The notes beneath the pieces were generated by a model, which saw only the letters and a list, made by a program, of their open reading frames with translations, searched no databases and was not told the DNA's origin. A stretch of 60,389 nt of DNA, counting the filler, from Bipalium vagum (Eukaryota): NCBI GenBank assembly GCA_037834085.1. It is 3 parts of 3 records of this genome, joined end to end, with 100 filler letters (N's around TTAATTAATTAA, not from the genome) between each part and the next. Parts side by side here need not be neighbours in the genome. Positions count along the whole stretch, not along the records: positions 1 to 20,493 come from JBBMKC010252313.1; 2 more parts are not named here. One strand, given 5' to 3'. Shown one piece after another: positions 1 through 20,493 of the stretch (the stretch's first letter is position 1; every line of letters begins with the position of its first letter). A program made the translations under genes and the position numbers.

Positions 1-256
1 ATAATTAAAATTAACGGTTACAAATTAAATTACGAATAAAAAAAGTTTAAAAACAATTTAAAAATAAAATTATTAGACATACAAATATGTCAAACTTTTT
101 AACCAATTTTAATTAAACATCTATGTAAAATGTGTCTTTGGTAGAGATGTTTTTCGTACATCTTTCATACTACGAAGTAATGCTTAACTACCCAATAAGT
201 TAAAAATTATAATTTAGCCTAAGGATATATAAAAATATATTTTCAAATATCATTGT

Positions 257-460
257 ACAGGGTGTTTGCAATAAATCTGGAATATTTCCAAAGTAATATT
301 ATATAAATATTTTTATAAAATCCATATGACTTTTACTTGTTTAAGTAAGCTAATATATCAATAATATCAATAGATCAAAAATAAAATTTAATGTTTTAGA
401 TATGTCTTCGGACTACGACAGAAGAGCAGCAATGCTCAAATTGCTTCGAACAGAAAAAAA
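257..460 (+). mobile_element. 5' end remnant of a Tc1/mariner-superfamily (maT-like) element
   Basis: TACAGGGTG terminus at ~257, followed by MSSDYDRRAAMLKLLRTEKK at ~402, which resembles transposase HTH N-termini. Confidence 0.4.
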
Positions 461-628
461 ACATTATTTTTAGCATATTTTAAAATAATGAAAGATGAAT
501 TTTTAGGGTAATATTACTCTAAATTGTAAATGTATCAATATAAAAGAAGTTGTTACTATATACAATGTGGAGAATTTCCTTTATTTTCATCGAACAAAGA
601 TGGATTGTTTATATTGTTATATTTTATT

Positions 629-630
<2 letters not shown>

Positions 631-661
<31 letters not shown>

Positions 662-673
662 TATTATTATTAT
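631..673. repeat. (AAT)n followed by (TAT)n microsatellite
   Basis: Visible trinucleotide tracts in opposite orientation. Confidence 0.9.
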
Positions 674-721
674 TTATTTCCCTTATCTCTGATTAAAATC
701 ATGTTAATTAATAGGACATAC

Positions 722-894
722 TTTCCCGTCCGACAGAGCCCCGTTTGAATTTCATCGGCAATAAACAGGACATTGTATTTTTTACATAAATCTTGCACTC
801 CCTTTAGGTATCCTGGAGATGGTACTATTACTCCTGCCTCCCCTTGAATGGGTTCTGTCATAAAAGCACATACATGAGGATCTTTAAGTTTATC
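722..894 (-). CDS. OAT: OAT-like exon 4 (gene continues beyond window start; catalytic Lys exon not in window)
   Basis: AG at 896-895, GT at 721-720; 173 nt, phase 0-2. Translates [30 protein letters not shown]...[15 protein letters not shown], the class III PLP-binding motif. Confidence 0.95.
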
Positions 895-1039
895 CTACAA
901 CGAATTGAAAAATTGAAAAATCTTTGTTGATATAATAATTTTATCTTTAACTTTTTATTTAAAATGATGATTAGAAAGTGAATAATTCCATGATATGTAT
1001 AAAAAAAAGAAAAGAAAAAGAAGAAGAATTATATCATAC

Positions 1040-1263
1040 TTCTAAGGAAGTTAAATCATCGTACGGAACGAGTTCAAATCCTGGTAGAAATGGACCAAAA
1101 CCATCTTGCAAAAGCTTATTTGTTGAGCTAGAAATGGCGGCCAGGGTCACTCCCCAGTAGTTGTTATATGGAAATACTATTTTTGCTTTATATTCAGGAA
1201 TCTTCTTGTTTCGATATCCCCATTTGCGAGCCAGTTTGCAGGCTGTTTCGCATCCTTCAACAC
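1040..1263 (-). CDS. OAT: OAT-like exon 3
   Basis: AG at 1265-1264, GT at 1039-1038; 224 nt, phase 1-0. Translates [75 protein letters not shown]. Confidence 0.95.
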
Positions 1264-3564
1264 CTATGATATAAATAATATTCTGACAAATTGAATAATT
1301 AATCTAAATTAACCAATTATTAATTTTTTATATCAAAACCGATGTTTATATTATATATATTATCAGTTTTATTACTAATACGTTATTTTTATAAATAGTA
1401 TTATAAAGAAAATATAAAATAATTATTACTTTTCACTGGGGATAATTTTATTTATCACGTGTGTTACATTTTCAAAAATGTGCGAAGAATTTTAATTATT
1501 TTATTTCTTAGTATTAAAGGAAATTAACAAATTTACCAAGAGAAAAGGGCAATAAATCTTAAAATGTCCTGCCAACACAATTAATGTTCCAACATGTAAA
1601 TATCAGTGCTATCCTGTGTCGAAAAAGCAATAATTTATGGTTACACCGTTAACTTTCTCCACCGTTTTACCACAAGATTGTTGATAATTAAAGTAAGGGT
1701 GCCGAAACAAAGGCGTGATCTCGTCAGTGTTATCTGATCTGAAAATGTTGCTCTAGCTTAAGAAGAATCGTGGTATTTGAAAACAATTTTATTTATTTTT
1801 CGGATGAGTTTTTTTGCTAAACATTCTAAAAATAGTCAAATTTTTGTTATTTTCCAATCCACAGTGCACCGAATTCTTCGTATGGAATTTAACTTATTAT
1901 TTTTTTAATTTAAAATTATTATTTTTAATTATATGTATAAGTTCAAAGTTATGATATTCGCAATAAGGGGAATCTGTTTATTAATATTAATTGAAAATAT
2001 TACACAATTTTATCAATTATATTATATATTTTTTGAATTTGGAACAAATAAATTTATTTTATTTACGTTAAATTCAATTGTTTTTTAAAAATTCAATAAT
2101 ATTTTAAATAAATTTTCTTTTTATGCTGCAATCAGATCTCTTTGATCTCATTTATTTTCACTCAATAATCTGATCCTGTCCAAGATCATTTCTACCTTCG
2201 AGTGATTTTGATCTCTTTTAAGTCGTTTTTCGTACTTTGTTCAATTACGTATATTTTTGCCTTTAAGATATTACTTTTAAATAAGGAAGATAAAATTATT
2301 TTTTTCAGAAATTTATAATCAAAAATAACAATGAAAATAACAAACAACTTTACAACAGTAAAACAAAAAATTATTTGTTAAAGTTATTTTGGACATATGT
2401 TTTCATATATGCAAGATATATTGAAAATATTATTATAACAATGTAATATATAAAATATAATAATAAATAATTAAATTTAGTTTTCGGGGTCGTTGAATTT
2501 AAAGTTCATAAAATTGAAATTGAACTTAACAAAGTTGAAATTTAATGTAAAACCTTGTATATTTCTAGTATAGAAATCACGTGACATCTCCTTTTGCTAA
2601 CCAATAATTATTAATTATTATATTTCTAATATATCAATGCCCAATGGAACCCCTTAATTGTATTATTATTGTTATTATCTTTTATCACATAATATTGTAA
2701 TATATTATAAAGATTATTTCTAATAATACATTATTTAGAAGTCAGATGTATTTTTTTCATTCTTTAGCTAATTTCGCAGCATTTGTGTCTGTTCAGTAAG
2801 AAGACTGAATTCACATAATCGGATTTGCTGTGGCTGTTCATTTTTACTGACGGTAATTATCATTCTTTGCTTAATTCTAAAAACTTATAGAGTAACTCTT
2901 TTAAGCTTTTAATTTTTATAAAAGAAAATAATAATAAACAATTTTAATCAGTATCATTTCCAATGAATCTATTAAGAGTTTTGGTTTCTCATTTGAAATA
3001 AAAAGAATAATATATATTTATAAATTTTATAAATACATGAATTTTTTTTCATAATATATTTTGTTTTTTATCTTTATTTTTATTGTTTTATCTTTTTATT
3101 AATGACACATTTTTATTTATATATCATTTGTCTATTAATTAATATTTAAAAATGAAAGAGATATAAAATTTTTTATTAATATTAATATTAATACTATTAT
3201 TACTTTTATTATTACTATTATTATTAACTTTTATTTTTATTATTATTAATATTTTGATTATAATTATTATAATTAATTTTATTATTATTAATAGTATTTG
3301 AAATAAACTTCTGTCTCAGTTTATATCACTTAAATAATTTCTGGTAGTTTTAAAATATAATCAATGGCTTTTAAATGGTCGATTAATGATGGGAAACTGA
3401 GACAAATTAATTTTGGGAAATATCAAGATTTTCATTGTCGCAAATTTCCATAAATAAATCAAAATATAAATAAATTTTCCTACAAAACAATTAAAACAAT
3501 GAGCTTTCTTGGAATATTTTTAGAAGACTTATAAATTGTGAGTGTAGGTGTTCAAAAAGGTTAT

Positions 3565-4000
3565 CTATTATTATTATTAATAATAATAAGCTCTCATTTG
3601 CAACTATTCCTGGCCTTCTGTATATCATCAAGTCTCCTGATTGTCAATATCTATTATCTATTTAGATTTTTCTCGATTTAACAAAAACCAAAAATATCCA
3701 ATTTTCCATCACCATCAGCGCCTGTTTGTGTCCATCTTCATTTGTTTTATTGAATGAGCTCAGATGACCTTGAGAATAAAAATAATTTACTATTTACCGA
3801 TTATCCTGTTAATATGGATACGGATTCTTAATAAATATTTTTATTGGGTTTTTGTTTCAATTCATTTCCAAAATTTAGTTTTAGGACTTGTTGAGGTATT
3901 TTTCTCCTGAAAAATCTATACTTTTCGCAAAAACAATAATTAATTAAATAACACTGATTTCGTTAATACGAAACCGTCAATAAAATGTAAAATCTCATGA
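3565..4000 (-). mobile_element. Degenerate non-LTR (RTE-like) retrotransposon 3' end
   Basis: Fragments such as RFFRRKIPQQVLK and KMDTNR, ending in a (TAA)n tail; weak motif match only. Confidence 0.3.
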
Positions 4001-5059
4001 ATTCTATGGACCTGAGAAAATTTGATTGCTAAAGAAATTAATATATTATTAATTAGTTTTAATTAATTATGTCAATCCTTATATTTTGTATTTTGCGTAC
4101 TGAATATTTATTAAATAAACAACTTTGAACACAGGTTTTATTTATTTCATAATAAAATATAAATTGGTCAATTAATGTTAATTAATATTTATTATTTTTG
4201 ACGATAAATCCCTTGCAGCATGTTTACTATTTTTCTGCATTTTAATTAAATGTAAAAAAGTTACATGCAATGAACATGCTAATAACTTATATAATAACTT
4301 ATTTAATAATTAAATAGTAATATAATAAATAATAAATCTTTTAAATAAATTTGTAAAAGAAAAAACAGAATTATTAATTATTGAATAAATAATAGACTTA
4401 GTTTTTAAAGAGTTTGTTAAAACAAATTAATATTTTATTTTTGAATTTTTCCAGATATAATATTACTTCGAATTTATTTATTCACTATTTTTTACAATAA
4501 ATATAATTTTATTAATTTAAAATTGGCAATTTTGATATTAAAAATTATTATTAATATATAATGTTATGTTATAAAAAATATTATTTCTATTTTTAATTAT
4601 TTATATTAAATCAAATATAATCACCATGACCTTTTTTAAAACTACTTAGTGAAGTAAGTGTTTTGGATAATAAATTATTTTCATCTTGGTAGGGCGTGTA
4701 TTTAATTATTTTATTTATATATCATAACATAAGCTTAGTGTGAGAGTCATTTTTGACATTGGTGGTATTCTTTTAGTATATTATGTATTAGTTAATATTA
4801 TTATTGTCATATGGGTCTAGAGAATGAATCTATTATTTCAGTGAGATCTCTGCAATAATATCTATAGTGCATATACGTGACCAAAAACCTAAATTCATCA
4901 TATAAAATTTAGTCTCATTTATTTCATAAACAAGCCACATTTTTTTATTAATATACATTAACATATCTCATTATTTATTTGTATATATTTCAATTTTATT
5001 TATTTATATTTTAAAGTAAATCTTTGTTAAGATAAATAATTAAAATGTATTTTAATAAT

Positions 5060-5800
5060 GATTGGTCAATAATCGTGTTAATTATTTATTGGATTCTTTA
5101 TAAAATAATAAATAATAATTCTTTGAAACCCATTATCAAAAATTGGACAAAAATAATTAAAATTAATAAAAGAAACCAGAATTTAATGTTGAACAAAATT
5201 TAGTATAAAGAAATCAAAAGACCTTTACATGTAAGCTTATAACAAAAAATTGTCCCTGAAAAATATTATATTAGATTTCAAAGGACCACAGTTTTGTTTA
5301 AGTGTGAACGTTGGAAAACAATCACGGTAAAGAACAAAACTAAAACTTATCCATGAATGATTGGAGACCTCCATGGAACCGTTCATTTATTTTGGTAGAG
5401 TTCTTTCTACTACGAAAAAGTATAAAATAATGGTGTTTGACAGATTGCAGTGAAAGTATATAATTATTGAACTATAGAAGAACACCCAGACTTTGATAAG
5501 ATTTATTAATGATTTATGCATATTTAATTACTATATTAACATAAACCTTTAGAAAATTTAATGATCAAAAAGTTAATAATCTTTCACTTAATCTCCTAAA
5601 ATGAATAAAACTGAATACGCAAAGTAAAAGTATAACTTTATAAATTCTAGAAAACCCTAAAAAGATCAGATCGTAAAATAAAATTGGTTTATTTCGGAAG
5701 ATATATTCTTTTATCGTATCTTTACAAAGAGAATCTTTGTAATTAATATTTTCATCATTAACTCAAACCTCGAATAAAGGTAAATTTGAAAGTTCTTTTA
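5060..5800 (+). pseudogene. Degenerate reverse transcriptase, probably Penelope-like
   Basis: IRFINDLCIFN at ~5497-5529 resembles RYIDDL; a G(x)SMGT-like motif lies upstream at ~5363-5380; many stops. Confidence 0.35.
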
Positions 5801-7249
5801 AGATAACTTTTCATGACCTTACATATGACACACATTTTGATAGGGCGATCAGAGTCACATTCATCAAAGTGTTTAACAATTTTGTGCCTTATCTGTAGAC
5901 AGGAGGTCTCTTGGCTACATTAATGTGTCGTTTAAAGACCTTTTTGTAAACCTCTTTAATAATTTAAATCTATCTTAATCGTCTTTATGATTGGATATGG
6001 ATGATATTATTTGTTCTATTGTAAAGGTTTCTTCGACATATTGCCATCGACATAACAATCATTATTATTAGTATTATCATACTAAAGATAATAATGAAAA
6101 TAATAATGTTAACCAGCATAAAACAAATGTCACAAAGTCAGATAGTAGAAGTATTAAAATGATAGATAATTAATCTGAAAGTTATTTAAAAATTATTCTA
6201 AAAATAAGAAAATAATTAAAAAAAAGTATTGTAAATAATAAGGCCATCATTAAAAACTCATTAAAATTATAATTATATAAAGACAGACTCAAACTGGATA
6301 CATTCTTCAAGTTGATCTGTCTAGAATCAAAAGTTTTAACCATATCACCTATGATCGATTTAATGATAACAATAATCTCTTGAGAACAAAAGGGTATCGT
6401 TTTACAAATGAATTTCAAGATTATACACTTATAGAACTTGTTGTATTTTGGGAAATATAAAAATATTTAATATGGTAAATATGGTAATGGTGAAGTTAAG
6501 CCACCATCTCCCATGAAAATCATAATTGTCGATTAAAAGATTCAACCGGTACGAAAAAGTAAATCTCTTCAATTAAGGTTTTTTATAGTAAAATTCGATA
6601 TTAAAAAGACAATATCAGACCTTGATTACATTTCACTAATGAAATAAGACATCATTATTAAATTGCATTAAGAAAGATAACCCCTTTAACTGAATATATT
6701 CTTTGAAATGCCCTTCTCTAAAAAAGATAAAATATCAAATTTTTATTATTTCTTTTTTAAAAGGGAATAGTCTAGCAGATATTTATTTCAATTTCTAACA
6801 AAAAAACAGCAAAAAAATTTAAGAATTTTTCCCTTAAATTTGGAATGTTTTGGAATGTCTCCCATCAAGACGATACCCAAAAATTATTATCCATGTTGAA
6901 GTACATTATGATTGTAATACATAGAAAAAAATATAATTTTGTTTTAATCAATTAAGAATGTAACGAAAATGTTCTGATATCGATTTTTTATTTACCAAAT
7001 CATGGATTGGCAATTTCTTAAATTTTACAAAGTTTTGAACTACTATCAATAATATTGCGACAGAAATTATTAAAAAAAATAATGTTAAATTTAATTGGTT
7101 TCGTAAAAAGAATTTTGATATTTTCAATATCAATACCAATGTAGATCAATATAATAATATTATTTTTCTATTTGTAAATATTTTCAACATAATTTTTCAC
7201 ATTTTAATTGATGTAAATACGAAATCAGAAATTAATGAATAACATAAAT

Positions 7250-7760
7250 AATAATTTATAAAAAATTTAATTTGTTTTCAACAAATAAATAATAAATTAT
7301 AATTATAATAATTTATAAAGAATTAAAATAAATTTTCAATAAAAAAAATAATAATGATCATAATCTGAATAATAAAAATAAAAAATAATAAATAATAAAT
7401 AATTACTAATGACAATAATATTAAATAGTAAAATAATAAGTTATAATAAATTAAATTTTTTTGAAAAAATAAAAAAATCAATAATGAATAATAATTTATT
7501 TTAAAAAATAATAAATTTAATCTTAATTTTAATTTATAATAAATTAAATTGTTTTTCACCAAATAAAAAATGAATAATATTAATAATAATTTTAATAAAA
7601 AAATAATGTATCAAAATTATTATAATAATTTAAAATAAATTTAATTTTTTTTAAAAATAAATAATAATGATAATAATTTTAATAATAAATTAATGATTTA
7701 TAGTACTTTTTTTCAACCTATAAATAATAATTTATAATAAATTAAATTTGTTTTCAACAT
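7250..7760. repeat. Degenerate AT-rich tandem repeat
   Basis: Unit AATTTATAATAAATTAAATTTGTTTTCAAC recurs with variation at ~7253, ~7438, ~7531 and ~7729. Confidence 0.55.
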
Positions 7761-8151
7761 ATTTATTTATATCAAAAGTCCTCTTAATAATAACTTAAAA
7801 AAATTTCTTCCATTATATTAAATATTATTTTTTCATCTGATAAAGACGTGAATGAGAGTTACTGGCAGTCATTATTTCTTTTTTTCATTATTTTCACCAG
7901 GAAGAAAACCTTTTTATTTATTCAATTAAATTTCCGTAAGTATGATGTTGTTTTATTATTTTGACTACGACAAAAGTTCAACAAATTATGCCAAATTCAA
8001 GGTCTCTAAAGAAAATATCAGATTTTAATGGAATTTAAAATAAATGTTACACAAATTATAAAACGACATTGATGTTGTTTATGGTGAATGAAACGATTAA
8101 AACTATGAATTTCTTTATCAATTTACACTTTTGTACCGGGGAGAACATTAC

Positions 8152-8376
8152 CTGTATTCATAGGTAAAACCCTGTCATATCCAAAGATTTTAGTTATAAA
8201 CTCTTCATATTCACCCAAGACGGAATTGAAAAATGCTCTTGATGTCAGCGTTAATTTGTGGGCCTGCTCTGAAAGAGCCTTCACGATTTCAGGATGGCAA
8301 TGACCTTGACTGATGGAGCTAAATGCGCTGAGGAAATCAAAATACATATTGCCTTCGACATCCCAGACATAAATAC
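8152..8376 (-). CDS. OAT: OAT-like exon 2
   Basis: AG acceptor at 8378-8377, GT donor at 8151-8150; 225 nt, phase 1-1. Translates [28 protein letters not shown]...[34 protein letters not shown]. Confidence 0.95.
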
Positions 8377-8633
8377 CTATAAACATTTTATATTTTAATA
8401 AATAAAATAAATATTCTGGATAAAAAAACAACTGCACAATTCCTATTTCTTTTTAATTTAAAAAGATAATATGTTTCAATTAAAATCTGAAAAAATAAAA
8501 TTTGTTGGAAACAGTTTCTAGTGATATTAATATTTTATAAAAATCATTCTAACAAATAAAATTGTGTCAAGAAAAAAATTCTTAATATTTTTTTATTTCC
8601 CTTTATTTCCGTTATTGATATTAGAAAAAATAC

Positions 8634-8811
8634 CTTGTCCTCTGTCAATTACTACAGGTATGGGTTTGTCACTGTGAGCCCCAAATTTGGCTTGTTTTTG
8701 ATATATAGTTTCTGACTTATTTGATTGAACCCGTATACCGTTTTTCCAGGACGAATTGACAGAAAAATTTCTTAAATTCAGAAAAAATACCAAACTTTTA
8801 CGGATCTGCAT
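8634..8811 (-). CDS. OAT: OAT-like class III aminotransferase, coding exon 1 (mitochondrial presequence + GAHSDKPIPVVIDRGQG)
   Basis: ATG at 8811; 178 nt; GT donor at 8633-8632 (phase 1). Aligns to human OAT GAHNYHPLPVALERGKG. Confidence 0.9.
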
Positions 8812-9099
8812 TTCAAAAATAAATAAATAAATTTGTGATATCGTTTGTTTTATTCTACAAAAATTGTCAAATTGATTTTTATTGGTAATAAATTTGCAGT
8901 GATTGAATTGATAAAAAATAATTCCGTGTATGCATCCAATTACTTTGATAATTTATAAATCATTATAATATACCATTATAATATTTTTATAATAATAAAT
9001 TTATTCATTATATAATAATATTAATCGTCATATAAATGAAAATTGGTCATAGGAATGTATTTTGTAAACAGAATTTATTTTTTTAATAAATAAATTGTT

Positions 9100-9700
9100 T
9101 TAATTGAAAGACCAACTTGGAAAGATCTCTTCAATTGACAAAATTGAAAAATTCCAGTTGATGTCTTGAATGACCTAAGGAAACATAAAATAGGAATTTT
9201 TTTCTGTTGAATGTCTTTAAATTTACTTGAAGTATACAAAAAACCAAAATATAATAATACATTTTTTATTTTTTTAAGAAGCATTCACAAATCATCGAAA
9301 TAAAAGACTAAGTTCTCATTCCGCGATATCTAATCTATATAAACAACCAACGGAACATTGTCTGGGTGGTGGTATTATTTGGGAAAACTTATTAAAACTG
9401 TTTCAAAAGGTTCTAATGTTCCTTTTCTCTATTAAATAAATAAAAATGGTAATCATTAAACTCACATTTTCTACCAATGGACATACGAAACATATTTATT
9501 GATAAATTTCCACGTTTTTCTGGGAGTGCTATAATATTTTCCTTTTTTTAAATAAATCTCTAAAATAATGTTTTCATGTCTTTGTCCGACAAATTTTCCC
9601 ATTAAAATTTTTTTTAAGTTCTTTTCATTATTATTTTTCATATGCATTTCTAAGGAAGTTAATCTTATTTGTTTTTCAGTAGATTTTTATGTTTTACCAT
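9100..9700 (-). mobile_element. Degenerate LINE (EN-RT linker region)
   Basis: KHYFRDLF...TPRKTWKFINKY pattern, typical of the region preceding RT in CR1/L2/Jockey-type LINEs. Confidence 0.35.
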
Positions 9701-10195
9701 ATACCGTGTAATGTGTTAATTTACACTGTAAACCCTGTAAGAGGTCGATTTTAATGTATTTTATTATCATTTTTAAGAATAATATTAAATTTTATTAAAA
9801 TATGAATTAAAACTTTATTTATAATAGTTTTTTATTCGAGGTTTTTGTATATAACATCTTAATCATATTGCTGAAGATGACATTACTTTTCGACGTTAGT
9901 TTCTACCAGGAAATTATGCAACAATTATAACCTAATAATTTATTCATATCCAATAAAAATAAGCGAGTCTAAAATGTGTTTATACTTAGTTTTACACACC
10001 TAAAATGATTACACAGACAATAGAATAGGTTAATATACTTATTCATTCCATGGGAAAGTTAATTTGTAAAAATATTTAAAAAGCCAAGAGAATTCATAGT
10101 TTTAAATATACAGGATGTATAAGTATCCGATTTTAAAATGTAATACTATAAGGTATATCCAACATAAGACTGCTTATCTTTGACACAGTAATACT

Positions 10196-10650
10196 TACAA
10201 GGTGTATTTAAAGAAACCCGACGATTTTACTTTGCTATTTAATACTTTTATCAATATATGTTTTATAATACTTTCTACAGTGAATACTAGAGAGGTTGTC
10301 ATTTATTATTTAGATAGAATGACATACATCACTCAGTAAAATACAAATACAAGGAAGCGCATTAATAAAATAACAATTACAAAGTTAAAACAATTTATAT
10401 TTTTACAAAATTTTCAAGATGATGTCCTTTCTGTTGAATGCACGCATGCAGTCGAGTCTCAAGGTTCTGAAGAATATTCTCAAACATATCAGAAAAAGTG
10501 CAAGCTAATTTATTGACGATTTTTTCACATAATAAGGGGATGGTTAGAGGTGGTGATTTAAACACTTTTCCTTTAAGAAACCCCAAAGGAAAAAATCCAG
10601 GCGAGTTAAGTCAGGTGATCTTGGAGGTCAATGAATTTCTCTGTCATTTG
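10196..10650 (-). mobile_element. 3' end of a rosa/Tc3-like transposon with TIR
   Basis: *PPRSPDLTRLDFFLWGFLK (frameshift) ...RLHACIQQKGHHLEN; TA-CAAGGTG terminus at 10196. Confidence 0.75.
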
Positions 10651-11639
10651 TCAAAATTTAAAATATCTAACTTAAATTTTAACACAGATTTCTTATATAT
10701 AAACAAATATTTTAGAAATGAAATGGCAGATATAGACGAATACAAAATTCATCATATAAAAAACTTAACATCCTAATAAAATAATATTGTATAAAAACAC
10801 GCTGTATTTATTAAAATTTATGATTTTTCCAAAGAATGAAAAATTAACCTTAATACACTTATGTAAGCGATTATAGAAATCTTTCATAAATTTTGACACA
10901 TTTCTGGTGATTTTCTGGCTGCTAAGCTTAAAATAAAATATAAAAAATGTACAGGGTTTCAGTTTAAGTAGCTTTACAACTTTACAAGTGTTATAAATCT
11001 TTTGAATATTTAGTTTTGTTTGGCTGAAATATTGCCTCGTGTATCTTGAAATGTAATAATACATTGATACATAATAATCCTCCGTTTGCTCAAAAATATT
11101 GTCTACCATTGATTATTATTTATGATTTTCGTCTATTGTCAGGGTATAATTGCATTTCAAAAATCATATGCACATTTGCCATATTATCTTTAACACTTGC
11201 TGAAATAAAAGATTTAGTATTGGAAAGGCAGGTCAAAGCCGTTTGATTGAATTAAAATTTTAAATCATTCATAACAATTCAAAGAATTAGGAAACGTTAA
11301 ATGAATAATTATCAATCAAGTAGATCAACTATCAATGCAATATTTAATACATTCCTCAAATATGGGTGTGTCATGAGTACACTAAAATTAAACGTTAACC
11401 AAAAAAGAGTGCAAATTTTTCAAATGAAAAAAATCAACTCTTGTAAAAAAACCAAATATATCACCTAGATGAAGTTCAGTGAATTTATTGCTTTACATGA
11501 AACATTCCGTAAAGCGATGTGACTTGCATCACAAAACCTTACATCCTAAGGTTGGTTCAGTAGTTGACAGAAGATGTGTTTGACAGACGAGTGAAATTTT
11601 ATTTTTAATAAAATGATATTGCATTAAAAAAGCTTCCCA

Positions 11640-12330
11640 TAAGTCATTTTTATCTGTCCTTCGTCATAAATTTAAATCCGTTTATAAATTTTTGGATCCC
11701 GTTTTTGGTTTGATGCGATATTAACTGTATTCCAGTTTCCCTAGATTATATTTATAAACACTCTTGCTATCTTACTTTTGGAAGTTTTGAATGGTTAACG
11801 GTGCCATGCTGGGTTCCAAAATGTTGTATATTTTTTATCCCTTAAACATGTCCGTATATATTATAGATCCATATTTAACTTCAATTATCTAAGTTACAGG
11901 AATTACTAAACGGTCATTTAGTTAAACAAAAAATATTTTCTTTTTACTGGAGTGGTCAACCTCTCCAACTATTTATACACCTTTAACAGGGTGGCCTTTG
12001 TGATATATCTGCTTGTTCATTTTGGTTTCATCAAGTTTTATGATGATTCCTTCTCCACAAATCGAACAATCTCTAATTGTTTCCCGTAAATTGTCTAGGT
12101 ATGACCACATTGCAGGATTTTATAAACTCTTTGCAGTTATTGAGGTTGTTAGAAACATTTAAAACCCATAAATGTCCGGCTTACATGGCTTTACAAAATT
12201 TTATTATAATGGTTTCTTCAAAGAATGTCTTTTGGAATTTCTTTGGAATTTTCTTCATTAAAAACACTTCTAATATTTCATGCGTTTCCGAAATCATGTA
12301 CGTTATTAATTAATTTTGATCTTAAACAAA
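11640..12330 (-). pseudogene. Merlin (IS1595-like) transposase pseudogene
   Basis: ICGEGIIIKLDETKMNKQIYHKGHPVKGV*IVG, GSIIYTDMFKG* and QHGTVNHS match Merlin motifs GGxGxxVEIDESK, GSxIxSDxWKxY and HxTVNHS. Confidence 0.8.
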
Positions 12331-13979
12331 AACCTTCAGCATCCTTCAAATTTATTAATTAATTAAAATAAAATATTTAGACAAACCGAAAACTGCATCA
12401 CTGATTCTTAAAATGTTCCAACGTTTCCTTACTTTTAAAAATTATTTAATATTATTTTTATAATATTATTTATAATATTATAATATTTTATAATATTATT
12501 TAATTATTTAATATTATATTAATTATTTAATATTTAAAAATTAAGAAATTTTTTTTAAAAAAATGGAAACATTTTTATTTTATATATTTAAAAAATATTT
12601 CCCTTTATCTTTATATCATATTTTCTTTATGTTTACTGTCTTGGAGTGTAAATAAGAAATTAACTGACTGATATGTAGAATGGTGAAAACCCTTTTTTAA
12701 TATCAGTTCACTCCGTTGATTTCGTTGTAAAAATTGTATTTTTGTAAATAAAAATACAAATAAAAATGTTTGCATTAAAAACATGACTCACAAAACTTAG
12801 AAGAAAAAAAGAAAGAAAAAATCTTGTCGAAGTTAAATCGGAGCTCCTATCAGAAAATGGTCGAATCGAAGTTATTAGGGCCTAAATCTTGCTATATCAT
12901 AATTCTCTATTATTATTATTTGGAGCCAACTGATAAGCGTGTGATTAGAGTAATCAATCATAAATTTAAAAGCAATTCACTTCTGAGATTCTTAATCATT
13001 TATTTTTATATTTATTATTGTTTATTTAAGTTCTCGGTTCAGCTTTTTCTTTTATTTCAAAGTTATTTTAGTTATAATAGGAATGAAAAATAAAAATTTT
13101 AATCTATAGATTTAGTTCAAAACCGAAAGAGGTCAAAAATAAAAAACGAAATGAGTTCGGAATCACATTGTTTACTAATCTTGCTGAGCTTATCCTTAAC
13201 CGTATAGTTTTATTGTGGTGATTTGAACAACTTAATTTTCAAGCACTCATATGCTCATAGAACGTCACACTAAATTTTACCGCTTGAGACCATTTTTCTG
13301 TCTCCTTTGGTCTATTTTTTGTCATTTTTTAAAACTGAAAAATCTGTTAAATATTTTTCGGATTAAATTATACATAGTAACAATATTACTATTTTTAGAT
13401 TTTTCATTATTTTGTTTTTTGTTATTTTCTATTTTTAGTAATCTCAATTTTTATCCTATTCAAATAAAATGAATTTATATATGATAACTTTTCTTCTTCC
13501 TTTTATATACATATTTTATTTTTTCTGACCCAGAATATTACTGTTTTATTACTCTTAGAAGTAAAGAAAAAACTGTTTTGGATTTGTTGTTAGAACATAT
13601 TTAACAAATATGTTCTAGCCATAGAGGTCTGTATTATAAAATTAACTGATAAATAAATAAATAACCTTTTAATAAATATTATTAAAAAGAACATTAAAAA
13701 AAACATATGTATTATTAAATTTAGACTTTTTAGTTTTTGATGTTAACGATATTAAATTAAAATTTTATGTTCTACACCCTTTTCTATTGTTTTTTGAAAG
13801 CTTTAAATCCTTTTGAAAAATGTATTTTTACGACATTTTTAAACTTATCTTTTTTATGGTAATATAATTGCAACTTCTTTATTTTCATATTATTCGTTCT
13901 GAATCATATTTGAAATAAATCTTATAATTATCATAATAAAATATATTTTAATAGAAATAAATCATAAAATATTTGAACA

Positions 13980-15043
13980 TATAAGGGAACCCAAAAAACA
14001 GCCTTTAAAAAACATTTATTCCAGAAATCGTACAACATTTCATAACAAATAATCAAATCAAATAGTCACCATGACACAAAATGGTGTTCAAATAATCTCT
14101 CAATCTGTTCAACTCAGGAATCAGTTTGTAACTGGTTTGCTTTTCCAGGAGCTGTTTCAGAAAAATTTTTATTTCGTGCACGAATTTGAATGCTTTTAGT
14201 CTTTCATTTGACTTCAAATTCCGAAATATAAACCAATACATCATGTTCATGTCAGGATTATAAGGTGTTTGTAGGATTAGCATGATAACAATCTGTTCCA
14301 AGAATATGTAAATTTGGCTATATGAGGGTGAGCGTTTTCCTTCGTATTGGAAGTTTTTATGTTGATGAGTTTCTATTTTAATTGATCAGCTTTATGTCAG
14401 AATTGATGGATCATCTTCGCTATTAATTGTTTATTATTTTAGAAATAGACCGAAAAGTCCGTAATAAAAAACCTTAGAAAAGGTTGTTGGGATAATTATA
14501 GGTAAAATTTTATTCATGTCAAAGAGGACAGGCTGATAGGTTTGTATAAATAAATGTTCCGTTTCATTACTATCCAAAAGCATTCGGCTAACTTCTAATC
14601 TTTGTGATTTTTAGGAATAATTCAAAAGAAAAAGAGGAACTCATTTATCCACCTTTTTTCTTACAAATATCTGGTTTGACCGCTAACTTGAACGTTTTTC
14701 TAACTGCTCGAAATGATTTATGAACTTTTATTTAAATCATCATTATCAAATAGCTGAACTCTCCTCAAATTCAAAACTTTTATGTTTCGAGTAGCTTCGG
14801 TTGTCTTATGCTTTGATTTCCATTCATATAAAAATATTGTACATATTACCGTATTATTTTATTTTGAATTCCATAATATTTAATAATAATTTAGATTTCA
14901 AGCTTATACTGATTTATAAATCGTTTCTTTATATTAATTATTACATTTTAAGCATTATTTTAAAAAAAAGTTATTTAAATTCGGAAATTTCATAAGCTAC
15001 AATCTAATAATTGTTGACATGGATTACATTTGGCTCCCTAGTA
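13980..15043 (-). mobile_element. Decayed mariner-like element
   Basis: K*VP, ENAHPH (DNARPH-like) and QTPYNPDMN...CHGDYL. Possible TIRs TATAAGGGAACCCAAA / TTTGGCTCCCTAGTA; boundaries uncertain. Confidence 0.6.
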
Positions 15044-15458
15044 AAATTAATAGTCTGGCTGGCAACGTTAAGGTTCTGGGTAAGTCGCCGAAAAACCCGG
15101 ACTGGTGGGTGCGATAGATAGATATAATTTTTATATCGATGGGTTTCAAAAGTTCATAAAAAGACAAATGCAGACATTGTGAAACGATTAAATAGAATTA
15201 TAAAACTTACGCTGTTGTGGATTTGTAAAAGGATGTTGTTAATAAAAAATACAACCATATGTTTTAGGTATTGTCGGACATGTTAAATATATTTAGCTGT
15301 CCAGAAAGTCTTTGTTAAATACAAAATGTTTCAAAACGTTATACAAACAATTTGACTGCATGAATAATATTTTTTATATCAGCGTAAAATACAAATTCCA
15401 ATCTATTGAATTTATTTTCATTAATTATTAATTGATTTATTAATATTTTTGTTAATAG

Positions 15459-15918
15459 ATGACAAATGAACGATCAAATATTTTGGCGATGCACAGAAGG
15501 GAGAAAACTTCAAATTTAAATCTCGAGATACAAGGGGCTATGTCATAATGGCGACCGTTCTGGAAGAGGAAGAAAGTGGATCGCAAACACGTTCAGAAGC
15601 CACAAGATCATCAAGAAGCAGGTTATGCGTAATCCATGGATATCAAACAGAAAAATAACCAGTGAGACCGGCATCAGCCACTCATCGGTTTACAGAATGG
15701 CCAAAACAGAGCTCAACCTAAAGCCTTACAAGCTCCACAAAGACCAACAGATGTAAACAAAGGAGTACGACTAAAGAGATATATGCAACTTCTGAACGGG
15801 GCCGCAGGTGAGAAATGGGAGAAAATCGTCTTTATCGATGAGAAGCTGTTTAAAATTAAATAATGTCAAAGGTCAACTGAAAACCCCGGACCATCTGCTA
15901 TAGTCACGCATTGCCAAA
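15459..15918 (+). mobile_element. maT/DD37D-like transposase N-terminal half
   Basis: DRSGRGRKWIANT...RNPWISNRKITSETGISHSSVYRMAKTELNLKPYKL...WEKIVFIDEKLF; GC content higher than the flanks. Confidence 0.75.
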
Positions 15919-15919
15919 A

Positions 15920-16775
15920 TCTTTTATCAACTCTGTACGTTTCTGTTGAAAAAAATTTTTTAATTTTTACAGTTGTTAGCAATATACATTTGAATCAATT
16001 GTTTTTAATGGTAAGAGCACAAAATATATAATACCCTTGTAAGTTCACCATATGGATACCATAAAATTTTTTTGGTTGGTATCAGGTTTCGATATTCTTT
16101 GACTGTTCTCACTAGACTTTGACCATGGTCTTTTACATTTGACATTATTGTATACAATTCATTTTTTGTCACCGGTTATCAGTTTTTCAAAAATCGACTT
16201 CTTTAATTTCGTTTGAGGAGCATGTCACAAATATTGATACGTTGAGTTAACTGAATTTCATTTTATGTAGAAACCCCCAAATATCAAGCTTTTTGAATAT
16301 TTCTTAATTAATTATCAATAGTTGTTTTCAACAAATCAAACTTTGCCATATCACGAACGGTAATTTGTCTGTCATATTCGATAACTACTTCTTCATAACT
16401 ACGTCTTCATTCAGTTGAACTGGCCTACCAGAATTGAGATCTTTCAGGAATGAAATTTGATAAACCAAATCTGGCAAGTACGTTGTTATTCAATCTTTGC
16501 CATAGACTCTACATAGTTTTCGATGTCTATCTGAAACTTCTTTGTCTTTTAAGTTAATAAAGTGCAATATGTCTAATATGTTCATGTAGATTTTGCATTT
16601 TCAAATATGAGGCGTATAAAATTTATGCATATAAAAAAATTTTAAAATTTTGTGAAATATAGATATTAGTATATGATATAATAAAAATTTACATTAAATG
16701 CACTCATACTTACAAAACAAATATTAACAACTTCCACAATGCAAAAACCGAAAAGACTTTTCGGACAACCTAATA
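15920..16775 (-). mobile_element. mariner (cecropia-like), 5' TIR plus truncated transposase
   Basis: TIR TATTAGGTTGTCCGAAAAGTC at 16775; MQNLHEHIRH...; LITGDKK*IVYNN; MVSIW*TYKGIIYF. Confidence 0.85.
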
Positions 16776-19700
16776 AAAATAAAAAATTGTTCTAATAATG
16801 ACAAAGAATTTAATTCATTTCATTTTCAGAATTTGTCACCATTACACCTTAAATCTATGTTATCCTTATTCTAATTGATGGACCCGGAAATGAATTATCC
16901 AGAATTTGTGAAATCATTATGTGCCAATGAAAAATGAAATCGAGATAAAACAAAAAAATTGAAATGTAGTGTATTCAGTTGATCTATTAAATGACAACGT
17001 CAAGCTCCATGTTTATCCATAAATTCAAGTAACCCTGCAACAATTAAAATAAGAACTTATGGCCCGTGTAGTTAGTATAGCCTAGAAGTTACTTTATTCA
17101 AATTCTAATATTATTTTAAGTCAACTAATAGATAAAATAAATTAGTCTATAATTTCATTTCTTCGAATTTCATCTTTTCAAGTTTCATCTTTTGGATCTT
17201 TGAAACATTTCCTTGCATATCAAACAATCAGAAACATCGATGATCCACAAATTTTAATCAAAGCCAGAAAAATATTTCCATAAAAGTATTCATTGTTTGC
17301 GCAAAAAATGATAATAAAAATATCTATGTTAAAAATTGTGTACACTAACATTGGATTAATGTTTGTTATTCGTTTGCAAATTATTTGAAAAACATTGAAG
17401 GTTTTAATGAACCAAAAATATATGCAAACCCCAAATTGAAATTCGATAATTTTTCAATTGTTGATTAATATAATACCCATGTGTTGAGTTTCTTTTTGAA
17501 CCCAGCCCTAATCAATTTGTTGACATTTATGACATTTCTTTCTTAATTTAACTAAAAATTTCATCGAAGTTTTAATTAAATTTAATTAAAATTAATGTCA
17601 TAAATAATGATCATTTGTCTAATTATGGTAAAAAAATGTGGTCATAATTTTGTGAATTTTATGTTTTTTTTCCTTTTTACTGTTAATTTCAATATAAATA
17701 TTATAAGTTAGTGAGAATGAATAAATATCACAATTTGAGAATATTGGATATAATTAGATATAAATCAACGTTCATCCTGTAAAGAAAATAAACATGGTAA
17801 ATAAATCAATCAATAAAAGCACTGAATAATAATAAATAATTTTGAAGATTTTCAAAAATTTAATAAAATATTGTTATAATAGAATATTTTATGATATGTA
17901 TGTATATTATTAATTATACATAATAGTATTAATTATTTTAAAAATAGTTTGGAAAGTCTACAATTTGTAGAGTATAAATATGAAATCCGCTGTGATTATG
18001 AATATCGATATACATACTCAAAAATCTTTTGATTCTACTTGTATAAGGAAAAATTCATATGAAAGTTACAAATGGTAAGCAGAACTGAAAATAAATAAAA
18101 AATATTTTACATCTTCAGACTTAGGTAAATAATTATTAACTTGACAATATAATAATCACGAAAAATTAATATATTTGTCATTTTAAAAATTCAATGTGAA
18201 CTTTGGAAAAATCCACTTTAGCAAAGTCATTCATTTTTTACTGAAGAACTGTTTAAAAGCCTTAAGATTTAGTAAATAGTTTTAAGATCGTTTCAAGAAC
18301 AAAACTGGGTCTTTTATGATAAGATTTGTCAGATATCTCTAGAACCTATGAAACAAACCTGTTCTCATTCTATAAATTCGTTTTTTAATCTGATATGTAA
18401 TTAAAAGAATTGTAACAGTGGATTTAGCAAAATTTCGTTATAAATTGAATTCATAGCTCTTTATGACAGTTTTTTCTCCAGTTTCATTTACTGTTTGACA
18501 TTAAATGAAACTGTCAAAACAAATTGACATGCCCAGTCACAATATCCGGTAATCGTCACATTAATATTCGGTTAAAGTATTTTATTCCAAATCTTTCTGA
18601 ATTTAAAAAGAATATTTATCTCCAGATTACATTTTTTCAAATATACGCAAAACTTTGTGTAAATCCATTAAGTTGATTTAAACAACAGTAATTAATGATT
18701 AAAAACTAGGAACTTTATTTTTGATAAATAAAACCAGTGAAAGAAATTGTCTTAAATTAATGTAATAAACCATTCCTTAACGAAATGATAACGTAGACAA
18801 TGATGCTCATTTATTCATGAATTCAACTTATATGTACATGTATAAAATTTCATTCAATACATCTGTAAATATAAGTTGTTTCCATTAACAAATTCACAAA
18901 ATGAAAAACCGCTTTACTAAAAAAAACGATCATTGACTTACGTTTTTTTCAACTGATGATTTTACTAAAAACTGAAGTAATAAAAACCGATTTACAATTA
19001 TAAGCAGACAAGTAAAAATTGAACATATGATTCCACTGATATATCGATTACCTTTAGTCATTTTCAGCAACATAACATAATAATCAGCACAATCAAAACG
19101 AGTGAATGGTATGAGAAAAATAACGTATTGGCGAGAGTTGCGAAAATAAACCAGTAACAAAGATAGTTAGCCTTAAATTTCATTGAATTGATACAGCCAC
19201 TACTGAAGAAAACGATCTCGTTTTTGGATAAGTTAGCATTTCATAGATTTAATGAAAATAGTCAATAGTTGGTCGAATCATATTATATTACACAATCGGC
19301 TAGAGAATGGCTTCGATATTGCCCAAATGTCTGGTTGTCCTTTCTGTCTAAGTGGTCAGGACTTGTTATCCAATATTACCATAAGTTGTTTAATCGATAC
19401 TGAAGTTAATTAGATCATTATATTGATAAATAGCTGAGAAAAACTGAATTATTTGTCATTTAATTATAAAAGATTAGAAATCTCTGGTCGTTAGAATTCT
19501 GATCTGTTTTTTTTAATAATATTAAAAGTTTAATTTTAAATTTTGACATTATTTTCCGTTTGCTCTGTACAGGTTCGTAAAAATGAGGACAGACGTTGGA
19601 AATATGAAAGTTGATAAAAAAAATAATTTTCAAAATTATCGATAGATGAATTGTTCACAAAAAAATCTTTTATAGTGAAAATAAATTGATATTTTCAATA

Positions 19701-20493
19701 AATAATGACCTCGTTGGAATTTAAAATTTTTTTTAAGCTTTTAAATTAACACCAAACAGATTTTCATTTTTAAATTTCTTTTAGCAAATTGTGTCTTTTT
19801 CTCATATTTCACCTTCACATATAAAAATTCTGGAAAAATTAAAATTAATTTATTAATAATTATATTATATTATTTATTAATATATAAAGATTAGGATAAA
19901 TTCTCTTTAAACAAATGCTTTAGTCGAAGATTATCCAATATTGGAGCTATTAACAACTTTTTTTAATTTAGTATCATTTTAATAACAAAAGCAGTTAATT
20001 TCCTTTTACTTACTTGTCGTTAATCCATGTCTTTTTCATAGAATTAGTGAAGTTAACTGGAATATTTTAAGTCTTCATTATCCTTTTTATATGATTTATT
20101 AATATTTAACTTTCCTCTTGGTTTTAATTTTTACCTGAGATAACTGTTTTTTTAAAATTAACTTTATTAAAGTAAACTAAAATTAAAATCGATATTCATT
20201 TCTTATTGGATTATAATGTATTTAACTAATACTAATTCAATTAAATTAATTTTGGATTCTTTAAGGTAATCCTTCAGTTAATAAGTGTAAAATATTTTAA
20301 AGTATCAAGAAACTTCTGAAATTTTTTTTACTATGTTTAATGTTTGAATTCATGTGGCGTGAAAATAGGAGTAACTGCTAGAAAGTAGTGTAAAGCGGGA
20401 TTGACAAATAATGAAGTGTTACTAATATACGGAAATGTAGCAACGTGTGCTCGTCTGCTTTTGACTCCTCACTATTTGTACTCGTTGTGTTCG

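What the first reader, a model, noticed from the sequence alone, without database searches (positions are those of the whole stretch)
722..8811. Intact OAT paralogue lacking both ornithine-anchoring residues (Y55->D, R180->V): candidate new mitochondrial aminotransferase activity
Seen: four exons splice in frame with canonical GT-AG and no stops, and the PLP scaffold is conserved (NTGVE, EPIQGE, ADEIQTG). However GAHNYHP reads GAHSDKP (Asp codon 8668-8670) and NFWGRT reads NYWGVT (Val codon 1148-1150). Established: in human OAT, Arg180 binds the ornithine alpha-carboxylate and Tyr55 the alpha-amino group; both are strongly conserved and mutated in gyrate atrophy. Inference: losing the cationic carboxylate clamp and gaining an acidic residue suggests a substrate with no alpha-carboxylate and a distal positive group (diamine, polyamine, agmatine or biogenic amine). 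The changes cluster in the pocket of an otherwise well-conserved protein, which looks more like neofunctionalisation than decay.
Basis: partly seen in the sequence, partly recalled or inferred. Interest (0 to 1): 0.85.

Follow-up and report, generated by a model that had tools for sequence, protein, structure and literature searches.

The report
Ornithine aminotransferase duplicate with rebuilt substrate pocket
This animal genome, probably a flatworm's, has a normal ornithine aminotransferase gene plus an old, still-constrained duplicate that keeps the catalytic machinery but has replaced every residue that holds ornithine, so it probably acts on another amine, perhaps a diamine such as putrescine; no assay or RNA data exist.

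Summary
The window's minus strand carries exons 1-4 (8811-8634, 8376-8152, 1263-1040, 894-722) of an ornithine aminotransferase (OAT) homologue. All splice sites are GT-AG and there are no stops.

Aligned to human OAT it reads Y55D and R180V. It also reads Y85F, N89S, F177Y, E47Q, N54S and D190N, at sites that are invariant or nearly so in 223 OATs. E235, D263 and Q266 are kept.

The contig ends inside intron 4. The genome holds a second, fully canonical copy (C9223) and two intact sets of 3' exons. Both sets keep K292, T322 and R413.

The likelier partner (C206193) adds G317D at the pocket entrance. Positions 180, 85 and 317 are the ones that separate E. coli putrescine aminotransferase from OAT.

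Synonymous sites between the two copies are saturated while dN is 0.22. The frames would not stay open under even 0.05 neutral substitutions per site. An exon-3 fragment from another species shares F177Y, R180V and D190N.

This favours a functional enzyme with changed specificity over decay. The diamine substrate, expression and the exon 4-5 link remain unproven. It is a new variant of a known kind.

The parts
8634..8811 (-). Exon 1 (59 codons plus 1 base). Starts at ATG 8811. Codons 1-33 have 6 Lys/Arg and no Asp/Glu, as a mitochondrial presequence would. Carries the GAHSDKP motif.
   Evidence: Same length, start and donor phase as exon 1 of the canonical copy.
8668..8673 (-). Codons AGT GAC, giving N54S and Y55D. 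Both sites are invariant in 222 of 222 OATs.
8692..8694 (-). Codon CAA, giving E47Q. The site is invariant in 222 of 222 OATs.
8152..8376 (-). Exon 2, human residues 67-142. Reads [14 protein letters not shown] where OATs read LSxYSAVNQGHCHP.
8309..8323 (-). Codons for Y85F (8323-8321), A87S, V88I and N89S (8311-8309).
1264..8151 (-). Intron 2, 6.9 kb, GT...AG. AT-rich, with tandem repeats at 7247-7754 and 3173-3298.
1040..1263 (-). Exon 3, human residues 142-216. Holds [17 protein letters not shown] and [16 protein letters not shown].
   Evidence: A Logan contig is identical here.
1148..1159 (-). Codons TAC TGG GGA GTG, giving F177Y and R180V. R180 is kept in 223 of 223 OATs.
1118..1120 (-). 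Codon AAT, giving D190N (D in 222 of 223 OATs). P0056 shares this change.
722..894 (-). Exon 4, human residues 217-274. Keeps EPIQGEAG (E235, 840-838) and ADEIQTG (D263 756-754, Q266 747-745). Ends in phase 2 before GTATGT.
1..721 (-). First 721 bases of intron 4; the contig ends here. Contains an (ATT)n run at 617-684 and one copy of a roughly 200-bp interspersed repeat at 225-462.

Best explanation
The window holds the 5' half of a functional, lineage-specific duplicate of the mitochondrial ornithine aminotransferase gene. The host is an AT-rich animal, probably a free-living flatworm.

The protein keeps what a class III PLP aminotransferase needs for catalysis: the G142/V143 region, D263, Q266, K292, S321 and T322. 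It also keeps the E235-R413 pair that handles 2-oxoglutarate and glutamate in the second half-reaction.

[quoted passage not shown] The changes are Y55D, Y85F, R180V, F177Y, N54S and N89S, and most likely G317D and E318Q from the partner subunit.

The most likely result is an enzyme that no longer uses ornithine efficiently. Instead it would transfer the terminal amino group of a substrate with no alpha-carboxylate and a distal positive charge to 2-oxoglutarate. Putrescine or cadaverine are the simplest candidates: the distal ammonium would sit against Asp55 (and Asp317*), and the lost Arg180 is no longer needed.

Shown: the gene structure, the substitutions, the presence of a canonical copy, and the constraint. 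Inferred: the pairing with the 3' exons on C206193, mitochondrial targeting, expression and the substrate.
For: 1. Residue mapping onto human OAT. The changes are D55, F85, S89, Y177 and V180. E235, D263 and Q266 are kept.
2. In 223 full-length OATs from animals, protists and bacteria, E47, N54, Y55, Y85, R180 and G317 never carry the residues seen here. The canonical copy B, and the exons on Z and Y, have no change at any invariant site.
3. A canonical paralogue sits on C9223 with the same exon phases. Ornithine catabolism is therefore covered and the duplicate is free to change.
4. Constraint. Between the copies pS is 0.73-0.87 (saturated) and dN is 0.22. Only 1.4% of simulations keep all seven exon frames open after 0.05 neutral AT-biased substitutions per site, and 0.03% after 0.1.
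5. Both candidate 3' sets are open, have GT-AG borders, and keep LGKAL (K292), GST (T322) and the R413 motif.
6. P0056, a 99-aa ORF from another species' assembly, shares NNYWGVT and STN, i.e. F177Y, R180V and D190N. It groups with the window's exon 3 (SH-aLRT 94) inside the clade of B and P0208. None of about 200 other exon-3 homologues lacks the Arg, apart from P0146, which has His.
7. The E. coli putrescine aminotransferase structure paper (PMC4244111) names three differences from OAT: Lys183 for Arg180, Phe91 for Tyr85, and Phe327* for a glycine, which is Gly317 by the T332/T322 offset. The paralogue is changed at all three positions and carries the same Phe at position 85.
8. Human R180T, Y55H/A/G and Y85I each cut ornithine efficiency by 100- to 1000-fold or more (PMC13327489).
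Against: - No RNA run holds the locus. Two motif scans of JGI metagenome and metatranscriptome contigs found no A-type transcript.
- The exon 4 to exon 5 link is not physical. Exon 5 evidence points the other way: the exon 5 on C238819 is the more derived one.
- Conservation of D55 and F85 outside this genome could not be tested.
- The copy still evolves faster: 27 versus 7 unique changes at conserved sites, and long terminal branches. Some relaxation of constraint is therefore possible.
- YgjG has Lys, not Val, at position 180 and Phe, not Asp, at 327*. The parallel is positional, not identical.
- No structure or docking of the joined model was made.
Confidence: 0.45

Rival explanations
1. 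Relaxed or decaying duplicate. After duplication the copy lost ornithine binding and survives as a weak, promiscuous or non-catalytic protein (a pseudoenzyme or a recently dead gene) with no new specific activity.
For: About four-fold faster protein evolution than copy B (27 versus 7 unique changes). Long terminal branches for both A and P0056. No expression evidence. Only one other species was found to carry it.
Against: The frames are open across seven exons although dS is saturated; simulation gives P of 0.014 or less after only 0.05 neutral substitutions per site. All catalytic and PLP-binding residues are untouched, while the changes at invariant sites concentrate in the pocket segments 54-55, 85-89, 177-180 and 317. 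F177Y, R180V and D190N are kept in a second species at 77% identity.
Confidence: 0.2
2. An alpha-aminotransferase for basic amino acids. With Arg180 gone, Arg413 would bind the substrate's alpha-carboxylate, as it does for glutamate. Asp55 and Asp317* would hold the side-chain ammonium or guanidinium of ornithine, lysine or arginine. The alpha-amino group would then be the one transferred.
For: The human R180T variant gains alpha-transamination of ornithine, producing pyrroline-2-carboxylate (PMC13327489). E235 and R413 are retained. Two new acidic residues sit in or at the pocket.
Against: The E235-R413 salt bridge that limits access to Arg413 is intact. Y85F and the more hydrophobic 177-180 stretch resemble a diamine enzyme. 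The alpha-activity of R180T is a minor side reaction of a crippled enzyme.
Confidence: 0.12
3. Still an ornithine delta-aminotransferase, with altered kinetics or regulation, for example a tissue- or stage-specific isozyme that holds ornithine through other residues.
For: Every exon scores best against the OAT equivalog TIGR01885, and the gene is sister to the canonical OAT of the same lineage. Asp55 could still contact the alpha-amino group.
Against: Single changes at positions 55, 85 or 180 in the human enzyme each cost 100-fold or more in efficiency, and here all three are changed. No other OAT among 223 carries any of these residues. No positive group is left for the alpha-carboxylate apart from the shielded Arg413.
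Confidence: 0.1
4. Artefact: assembly error, or a second organism in the sample, so that the two 'paralogues' are really orthologues from different species.
For: The assembly is highly fragmented (272,664 contigs). The only public run that holds the stretch is probably the assembly's own source.
Against: The key codons differ from copy B by 2-3 bases. A Logan contig is identical at depth about 12. Composition, microsatellites and exon phases are the same in both copies. Other class III aminotransferase exons (GABA-AT-like, AGXT2-like) occur only once, so the genome is not doubled in general. A and B share lineage-specific states, and X, Y and P0208 share L402I and I431L.
Confidence: 0.03

Closest known systems
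Mitochondrial ornithine delta-aminotransferase (OAT, EC 2.6.1.13; TIGR01885; human structures 1OAT, 2OAT)
   Same: It lies in the same clade and has the same exon structure as the host's canonical OAT, with about 70% identity to that copy over exons 1-4. The N-terminal presequence is of the same style. The PLP-binding residues, catalytic Lys292, and the E235/R413 pair for 2-oxoglutarate and glutamate are the same.
   Different: All three residues that position the alpha end of ornithine are replaced (Y55D, Y85F, R180V). Neighbouring near-invariant residues also change (N54S, N89S, F177Y, D190N, probably G317D). Each single change is crippling in the human enzyme.
E. coli putrescine aminotransferase YgjG/PatA (EC 2.6.1.82; PDB 4UOX; TIGR03372, NF008570)
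   Same: It has no Arg at the OAT-180 position and Phe at the OAT-85 position. It has a side chain instead of Gly at OAT-317*. The Glu-Arg pair for 2-oxoglutarate is retained. The pocket suits a substrate without a carboxylate.
   Different: It is not a sequence member: the putrescine-aminotransferase models score far below the OAT model on every exon. It has Val, not Lys, at 180 and Asp, not Phe, at 317*. It gains an Asp at 55, so the pocket becomes acidic rather than simply hydrophobic. No counterpart of the extra N-terminal helices or the Leu419 turn of YgjG was looked for.
Human OAT disease and engineered variants R180T (6HX7), Y55H/A/G (2BYL) and Y85I (2BYJ)
   Same: The same positions are hit. 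R180T was the best PDB match to exon 3, and the Y55A variant chain the best to exon 1.
   Different: Those are single loss-of-function changes in an otherwise normal enzyme. Here the changes are combined, fixed, shared with another species and accompanied by a normal paralogue.
Other divergent OAT-like sequences seen here: the N-terminal half of Holotrichia oblita P0207, and P0144 and P0146
   Same: They are OAT-clade proteins with non-canonical residues at 55, 85 or 180: S/F/R in P0144, F/N/H in P0146, and Ser at position 85 in the beetle copy.
   Different: They come from independent lineages and carry different residue sets. None combines D55, F85 and V180, and none is characterised.

Membership tests
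Class III PLP-dependent aminotransferase (Pfam PF00202) | Significant match to the family profile | tested here: met
   window exons match PF00202 positions 14-95 (75 bits), 93-165 (36.7 bits) and 174-242 (89.9 bits), each above the 30.5-bit cut-off.
Class III PLP-dependent aminotransferase (Pfam PF00202) | Schiff-base lysine (K292 in OAT) and PLP contacts D263, Q266, G142/V143, S321/T322 | tested here: met
   D263, Q266 and NTG-VE lie in the window. K292 and the GST motif are present in both candidate downstream exon sets. Those exons are on other contigs and are not physically linked to the window.
Ornithine delta-aminotransferase (TIGR01885, EC 2.6.1.13) | Best-scoring family and position in the OAT clade | tested here: met
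   TIGR01885 is the top hit for all six exons tested, at 122.8, 83.2, 93.7, 40, 112.9 and 57.2 bits. The whole-protein cut-off is 378.4 bits, and the exons were scored separately, never joined. The exon-3 tree places it with the host's canonical OAT.
Ornithine delta-aminotransferase (TIGR01885, EC 2.6.1.13) | Arg180 binding the substrate alpha-carboxylate | tested here: not met
   Val, codon GTG at 1150-1148. Arg is present in 223 of 223 OATs.
Ornithine delta-aminotransferase (TIGR01885, EC 2.6.1.13) | Tyr55 binding the substrate alpha-amino group | tested here: not met
   Asp, codon GAC at 8670-8668. Tyr is present in 222 of 222 OATs.
Ornithine delta-aminotransferase (TIGR01885, EC 2.6.1.13) | Tyr85, the residue that discriminates ornithine from GABA | tested here: not met
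   Phe, codon TTT at 8323-8321. Tyr is present in 222 of 222 OATs.
Ornithine delta-aminotransferase (TIGR01885, EC 2.6.1.13) | Glu235-Arg413 switch for 2-oxoglutarate and glutamate | tested here: met
   E235 lies in the window. R413 is present in both candidate exon 7 sequences, as IIRFAPP and IVRLAPP.
Ornithine delta-aminotransferase (TIGR01885, EC 2.6.1.13) | Ornithine:2-oxoglutarate activity | not testable with these tools
   Needs an enzyme assay.
Putrescine aminotransferase (YgjG/PatA; TIGR03372, NF008570) | Sequence membership | tested here: not met
   These models score 54-64 bits on exon 4 and 49-51 bits on exon 6, against 94 and 113 bits for the OAT model. They are absent from the hit lists of exons 2 and 3.
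Putrescine aminotransferase (YgjG/PatA; TIGR03372, NF008570) | Pocket features that set it apart from OAT: no Arg at 180, Phe at 85, a side chain at 317* | tested here: inconclusive
   V180 and F85 fit. D317 is on contig C206193, whose link to the window is inferred, and it is Asp rather than Phe. The 327*-to-317 equivalence rests on the paper's statement plus the T332/T322 offset, not on a structural superposition made here.

The most novel reading that the evidence does not exclude
An animal mitochondrial diamine (putrescine or cadaverine):2-oxoglutarate aminotransferase that arose from OAT by duplication. It would have converged on the pocket positions used by bacterial PatA/YgjG (180, 85, 317*) and added an Asp pair as the anchor for the distal ammonium. 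I know of no transaminase route of polyamine catabolism in Metazoa (own knowledge; no literature search was run on this point), where this step is ascribed to amine oxidases. It would also be a natural three-to-four-residue specificity switch in a medically studied enzyme.
Probability: 0.25. Interest if true: 0.8.

Novelty: new variant of a known kind. Interest (0 to 1): 0.58.

Why it matters
OAT is one of the best-studied PLP enzymes, both as the cause of gyrate atrophy and as a cancer drug target. Positions 55, 85 and 180 are the textbook determinants of its specificity.

This paralogue replaces all three, and probably 317* as well. It remains under purifying selection next to an unchanged copy. 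That makes it a ready natural experiment on how a class III aminotransferase changes its amino donor.

If the substrate is a diamine, it would add an unknown step to polyamine or GABA metabolism in an animal lineage. It would also warn that homology-based annotation, which would label this gene 'ornithine--oxo-acid transaminase', is wrong for it.

If it proves to be a weak, drifting copy, the case is ordinary.

Tried and rejected
**Linking the window to exon 5**
- Contig ends do not overlap; the only end matches are (ATT)n microsatellites.
- Intron 4 (1-721) matches only a roughly 200-bp dispersed repeat elsewhere.
- A Logan loose end at base 53 belongs to a repeat on C246989.
- The flanks of C206193 and C31922 hit only repeats.
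- The three 3' contigs share nothing but coding homology.
- The repeat inside C206193 intron 5 has copies at 89% identity or less, so a chimeric join there is unlikely.

**Pairing by other measures**
- Pairing by GC3 was inconclusive.
- Pairing by distant outgroups was inconclusive.

**Expression**
- No RNA run holds the stretch.
- Two degenerate-motif scans of JGI metagenome contigs, for [10 protein letters not shown] and for WGVT-14 aa-GFGPF, returned nothing.

**Full-length A-type orthologues**
- Two profile searches used the exons as separate rows beside a full-length OAT. They returned only canonical OATs, apart from the fused beetle protein P0207, whose N-terminal half is divergent.

**Other**
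- ORFs elsewhere in the window have no Pfam match.
- The careful version of the tree did not finish, so the quick tree was used.

- The spliced model was never joined. No whole-protein search, fold, dimer model or docking was run, and all statistics are sums of per-exon counts.

Full report
**1. What is in the window**

The window is AT-rich, at 14-34% GC per kb. It equals contig C252313:1-20493 of a 440-Mb assembly in 272,664 contigs.

On the minus strand, four exons of a class III aminotransferase can be read directly:

| Exon | Coordinates |
|---|---|
| e1 | 8811-8634 |
| e2 | 8376-8152 |
| e3 | 1263-1040 |
| e4 | 894-722 |

- All introns are GT...AG.
- Exon-end phases are 1, 1, 0 and 2.
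- The 264 whole codons contain no stop.
- Intron 2 is 6.9 kb.
- The contig ends at base 1, 721 bases into intron 4, so the gene is cut by the assembly and not by a lesion.

I searched each exon separately, by reference. No whole-protein search, fold or docking was therefore done, and all totals below are sums of per-exon counts.

**2. The substitutions**

Alignments to human OAT chains fix the numbering.

- Asp stands at residue 55. The best match there was the Y55A variant chain.
- Val stands at residue 180. The best match there was the R180T patient variant 6HX7.
- Phe stands at residue 85, in [11 protein letters not shown] against LSSYSAVNQGH.
- E235, D263 and Q266 are intact.

I compared the exons with 223 full-length OATs from animals, protists and bacteria. 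The window copy departs at these sites:

| Conservation in the panel | Changes in the window copy |
|---|---|
| Invariant or nearly so | E47Q, N54S, Y55D, Y85F, R180V, D190N |
| At least 90% conserved | A87S, V88I, N89S, A173P, F177Y, A214S, V229T, R250Q, V265I |

The codons are listed. Y55D (GAC versus TAT) and R180V (GTG versus AGA) differ from the paralogue by 2 and 3 bases. A Logan contig of the only public run that holds the stretch is identical over 685-1400. Codons 55 and 85 were not re-checked against reads.

**3. A canonical copy exists**

A Pfam scan of the whole genome found a second set of exons 1-4 on C9223, with the same phases. Its sequence is fully canonical at the pocket: GAHNYKP, LSAYSAVNQGH and NFWGRS. 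I call the window copy A and this copy B.

Other class III aminotransferase exons (GABA-AT-like, AGXT2-like) occur only once. The genome is therefore not doubled or mixed in general.

Measures between A and B over exons 1-4:
- 70% amino-acid identity.
- pS of 0.73-0.87 per exon, which is saturated.
- dN of 0.22.

At sites where seven outgroups agree, A has 27 private changes and B has 7 (my chi-square is about 11.8).

**4. The downstream exons**

| Label | Contig | Exons held | Key motifs |
|---|---|---|---|
| X | C206193 | 5, 6, 7 | LGKALSGG; KPDQHGSTYGG; IIRFAPP, then stop |
| Z | C238819 | 5 | SLGKALGGG |
| Y | C31922 | 6, 7 | KPGEHGSTFGG; IVRLAPP, then stop |

All have AG/GT borders in the right phases. 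Whichever set belongs to A, K292, T322 and R413 are present and the frame closes at the normal place.

No physical link could be made.

P0208 is a 430-aa transcript product from a soil metatranscriptome. It is 83% identical to B and 67% identical to A.

| Evidence on pairing | Result | Favours |
|---|---|---|
| Identity of P0208 over exons 6-7 | Y 106/137, X 83/137 | A+X |
| Private changes at conserved sites | X 15, Y 5 | A+X |
| Change at an invariant site | Only X has one: G317D, with E318Q beside it | A+X |
| Exon 5, 26 aa | Z is the more derived: 5 private changes against 0 for X | A+Z+Y |

I rate A+X at about 75%. The repeat in X's intron 5 has only copies at 89% identity or less, so a chimeric contig is unlikely.

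**5. Is it decaying?**

In a simulation of AT-biased neutral substitution, all seven exon frames stay open in 1.4% of trials at 0.05 substitutions per site. At 0.1 the figure is 0.03%. Synonymous divergence from B is saturated. The copy has therefore been under purifying selection for nearly all of its history.

The changes at invariant sites concentrate in the pocket segments: 54-55, 85-89, 177-180 and 317*. No catalytic or cofactor residue is touched.

Among about 200 exon-3 homologues only one other lacks Arg180 in the same way. This is P0056, a 99-aa ORF on a 1154-bp contig of ENA assembly ERZ27256860.

- It reads [17 protein letters not shown]...DGFGPF...VPYDDL.
- It shares F177Y, R180V and D190N with A, at 77% identity over residues 23-74 of the exon.
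- In an exon-3 tree, A and P0056 join (SH-aLRT 94) on a long stem, inside a clade with B and P0208 (96).

The A type is therefore at least as old as the split of two species, and its key residues have been kept. Its terminal branches remain longer than B's, so some relaxation cannot be excluded.

**6. What it may do**

Published work on the human enzyme assigns roles to the changed residues (PMC13327489).

- Arg180 binds the alpha-carboxylate of ornithine.
- Tyr55 binds its alpha-amino group.
- Tyr85 discriminates ornithine from GABA.
- R180T costs more than 1000-fold in efficiency, Y55H/A/G more than 100-fold, and Y85I about 1000-fold.
- R180T gains some alpha-transamination.

The E. coli putrescine aminotransferase structure paper (PMC4244111) singles out three differences from OAT:

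- Lys183 in place of Arg180.
- Phe91 in place of Tyr85.
- Phe327* in place of a glycine. By the T332/T322 offset this is Gly317. The offset also draws on my recollection of the YgjG sequence and was not verified by a superposition here.

The Glu-Arg pair for 2-oxoglutarate is conserved in that enzyme.

The paralogue is altered at exactly these three positions and has the same Phe at 85. It also gains Asp at 55, where the alpha-ammonium of ornithine would sit. Putrescine is ornithine without its carboxylate. A diamine:2-oxoglutarate aminotransferase is therefore the simplest reading.

Alpha-transamination of a basic amino acid through Arg413 fits the same residues less well. A weak or non-catalytic duplicate remains possible.

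The first 33 residues have 6 Lys/Arg and no acidic residue, like copy B. This fits a mitochondrial presequence but was not tested.

**7. Organism**

In a quick maximum-likelihood tree of 54 OATs, P0208 is sister to cestodes plus trematodes (SH-aLRT 95). With the soil source and the AT-rich, repeat-rich genome, a free-living flatworm is plausible. This rests on one gene tree only.

**8. Comparison with known families**

By homology the gene belongs to the OAT clade; every exon scores best against TIGR01885. An annotation pipeline would call it ornithine--oxo-acid transaminase. It fails all three tested ornithine-binding features, so I do not file it as an OAT by function.

It is not a sequence member of the PatA/YgjG family, though it may work like one.

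I found no description of such a paralogue in the literature searches.

**9. Verdict**

- Novelty: a new variant of a known kind.
- Interest: about 0.58.

Noticed in passing
G000 contig C238819 (L026:1038-1115, minus strand): The second exon 5 (LLCVHHDNIKPDIVSLGKALGGGVFP) is more derived than the exon 5 on C206193: 5 versus 0 private changes at conserved sites. By the exon 6-7 evidence, though, it should belong to the slow-evolving canonical gene. This mismatch is unexplained.
   Followed up: partly
P0207 (Holotrichia oblita, 670 aa, annotated 'aminotransferase class iii'): This appears to be a fused gene model of two tandem OAT genes. The first half is a divergent OAT-like sequence (FVSTSSSLNQGH, YYMGRS, EPLLANAG). 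The second half is a canonical OAT. It looks like an independent divergent OAT duplicate in a beetle.
   Followed up: no
P0144 and P0146 (401 aa each, unnamed): These are OAT-like proteins with non-canonical pocket residues at 55/85/180: S/F/R in P0144 and F/N/H in P0146. The catalytic residues are intact. They are further candidates for altered specificity in other lineages.
   Followed up: no
window 225-462: One copy of a roughly 200-bp interspersed repeat (MITE- or SINE-like). At least 40 copies were scored at 80-89% identity on other contigs, out of 213 candidates.
   Followed up: partly
L015 (C206193) 1065-1881 and L016 (C31922) 1-240: Two high-copy repeat families lie in or next to intron 5 of the two OAT genes. 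One has 1,747 candidates at 89% identity or less and shows integrase-like ORF fragments. The other has 643 candidates at 90-95% identity and coincides with the start of contig C31922.
   Followed up: partly
C9223, intron 2 of the canonical OAT (L007, about 1729-2294): The donor of this intron reads G|GCAATT, so it appears to be a GC-AG intron. The window copy has GT at the same place.
   Followed up: no
window 7247-7754 and 3173-3298 (inside intron 2); 617-684: AT-rich tandem arrays with a 93-bp period of about 4-5 copies, plus (TTA)n microsatellites. The same (ATT)n type sits at the ends of contigs C9223, C206193 and C238819 and probably caused the assembly breaks.
   Followed up: no
window 9000-20493: No ORF of 70 aa or more has a Pfam match. 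A GC-richer patch at 15-16 kb holds short ORFs that looked like a helix-turn-helix motif by eye, but they gave no Pfam hit. No neighbouring gene was identified.
   Followed up: partly
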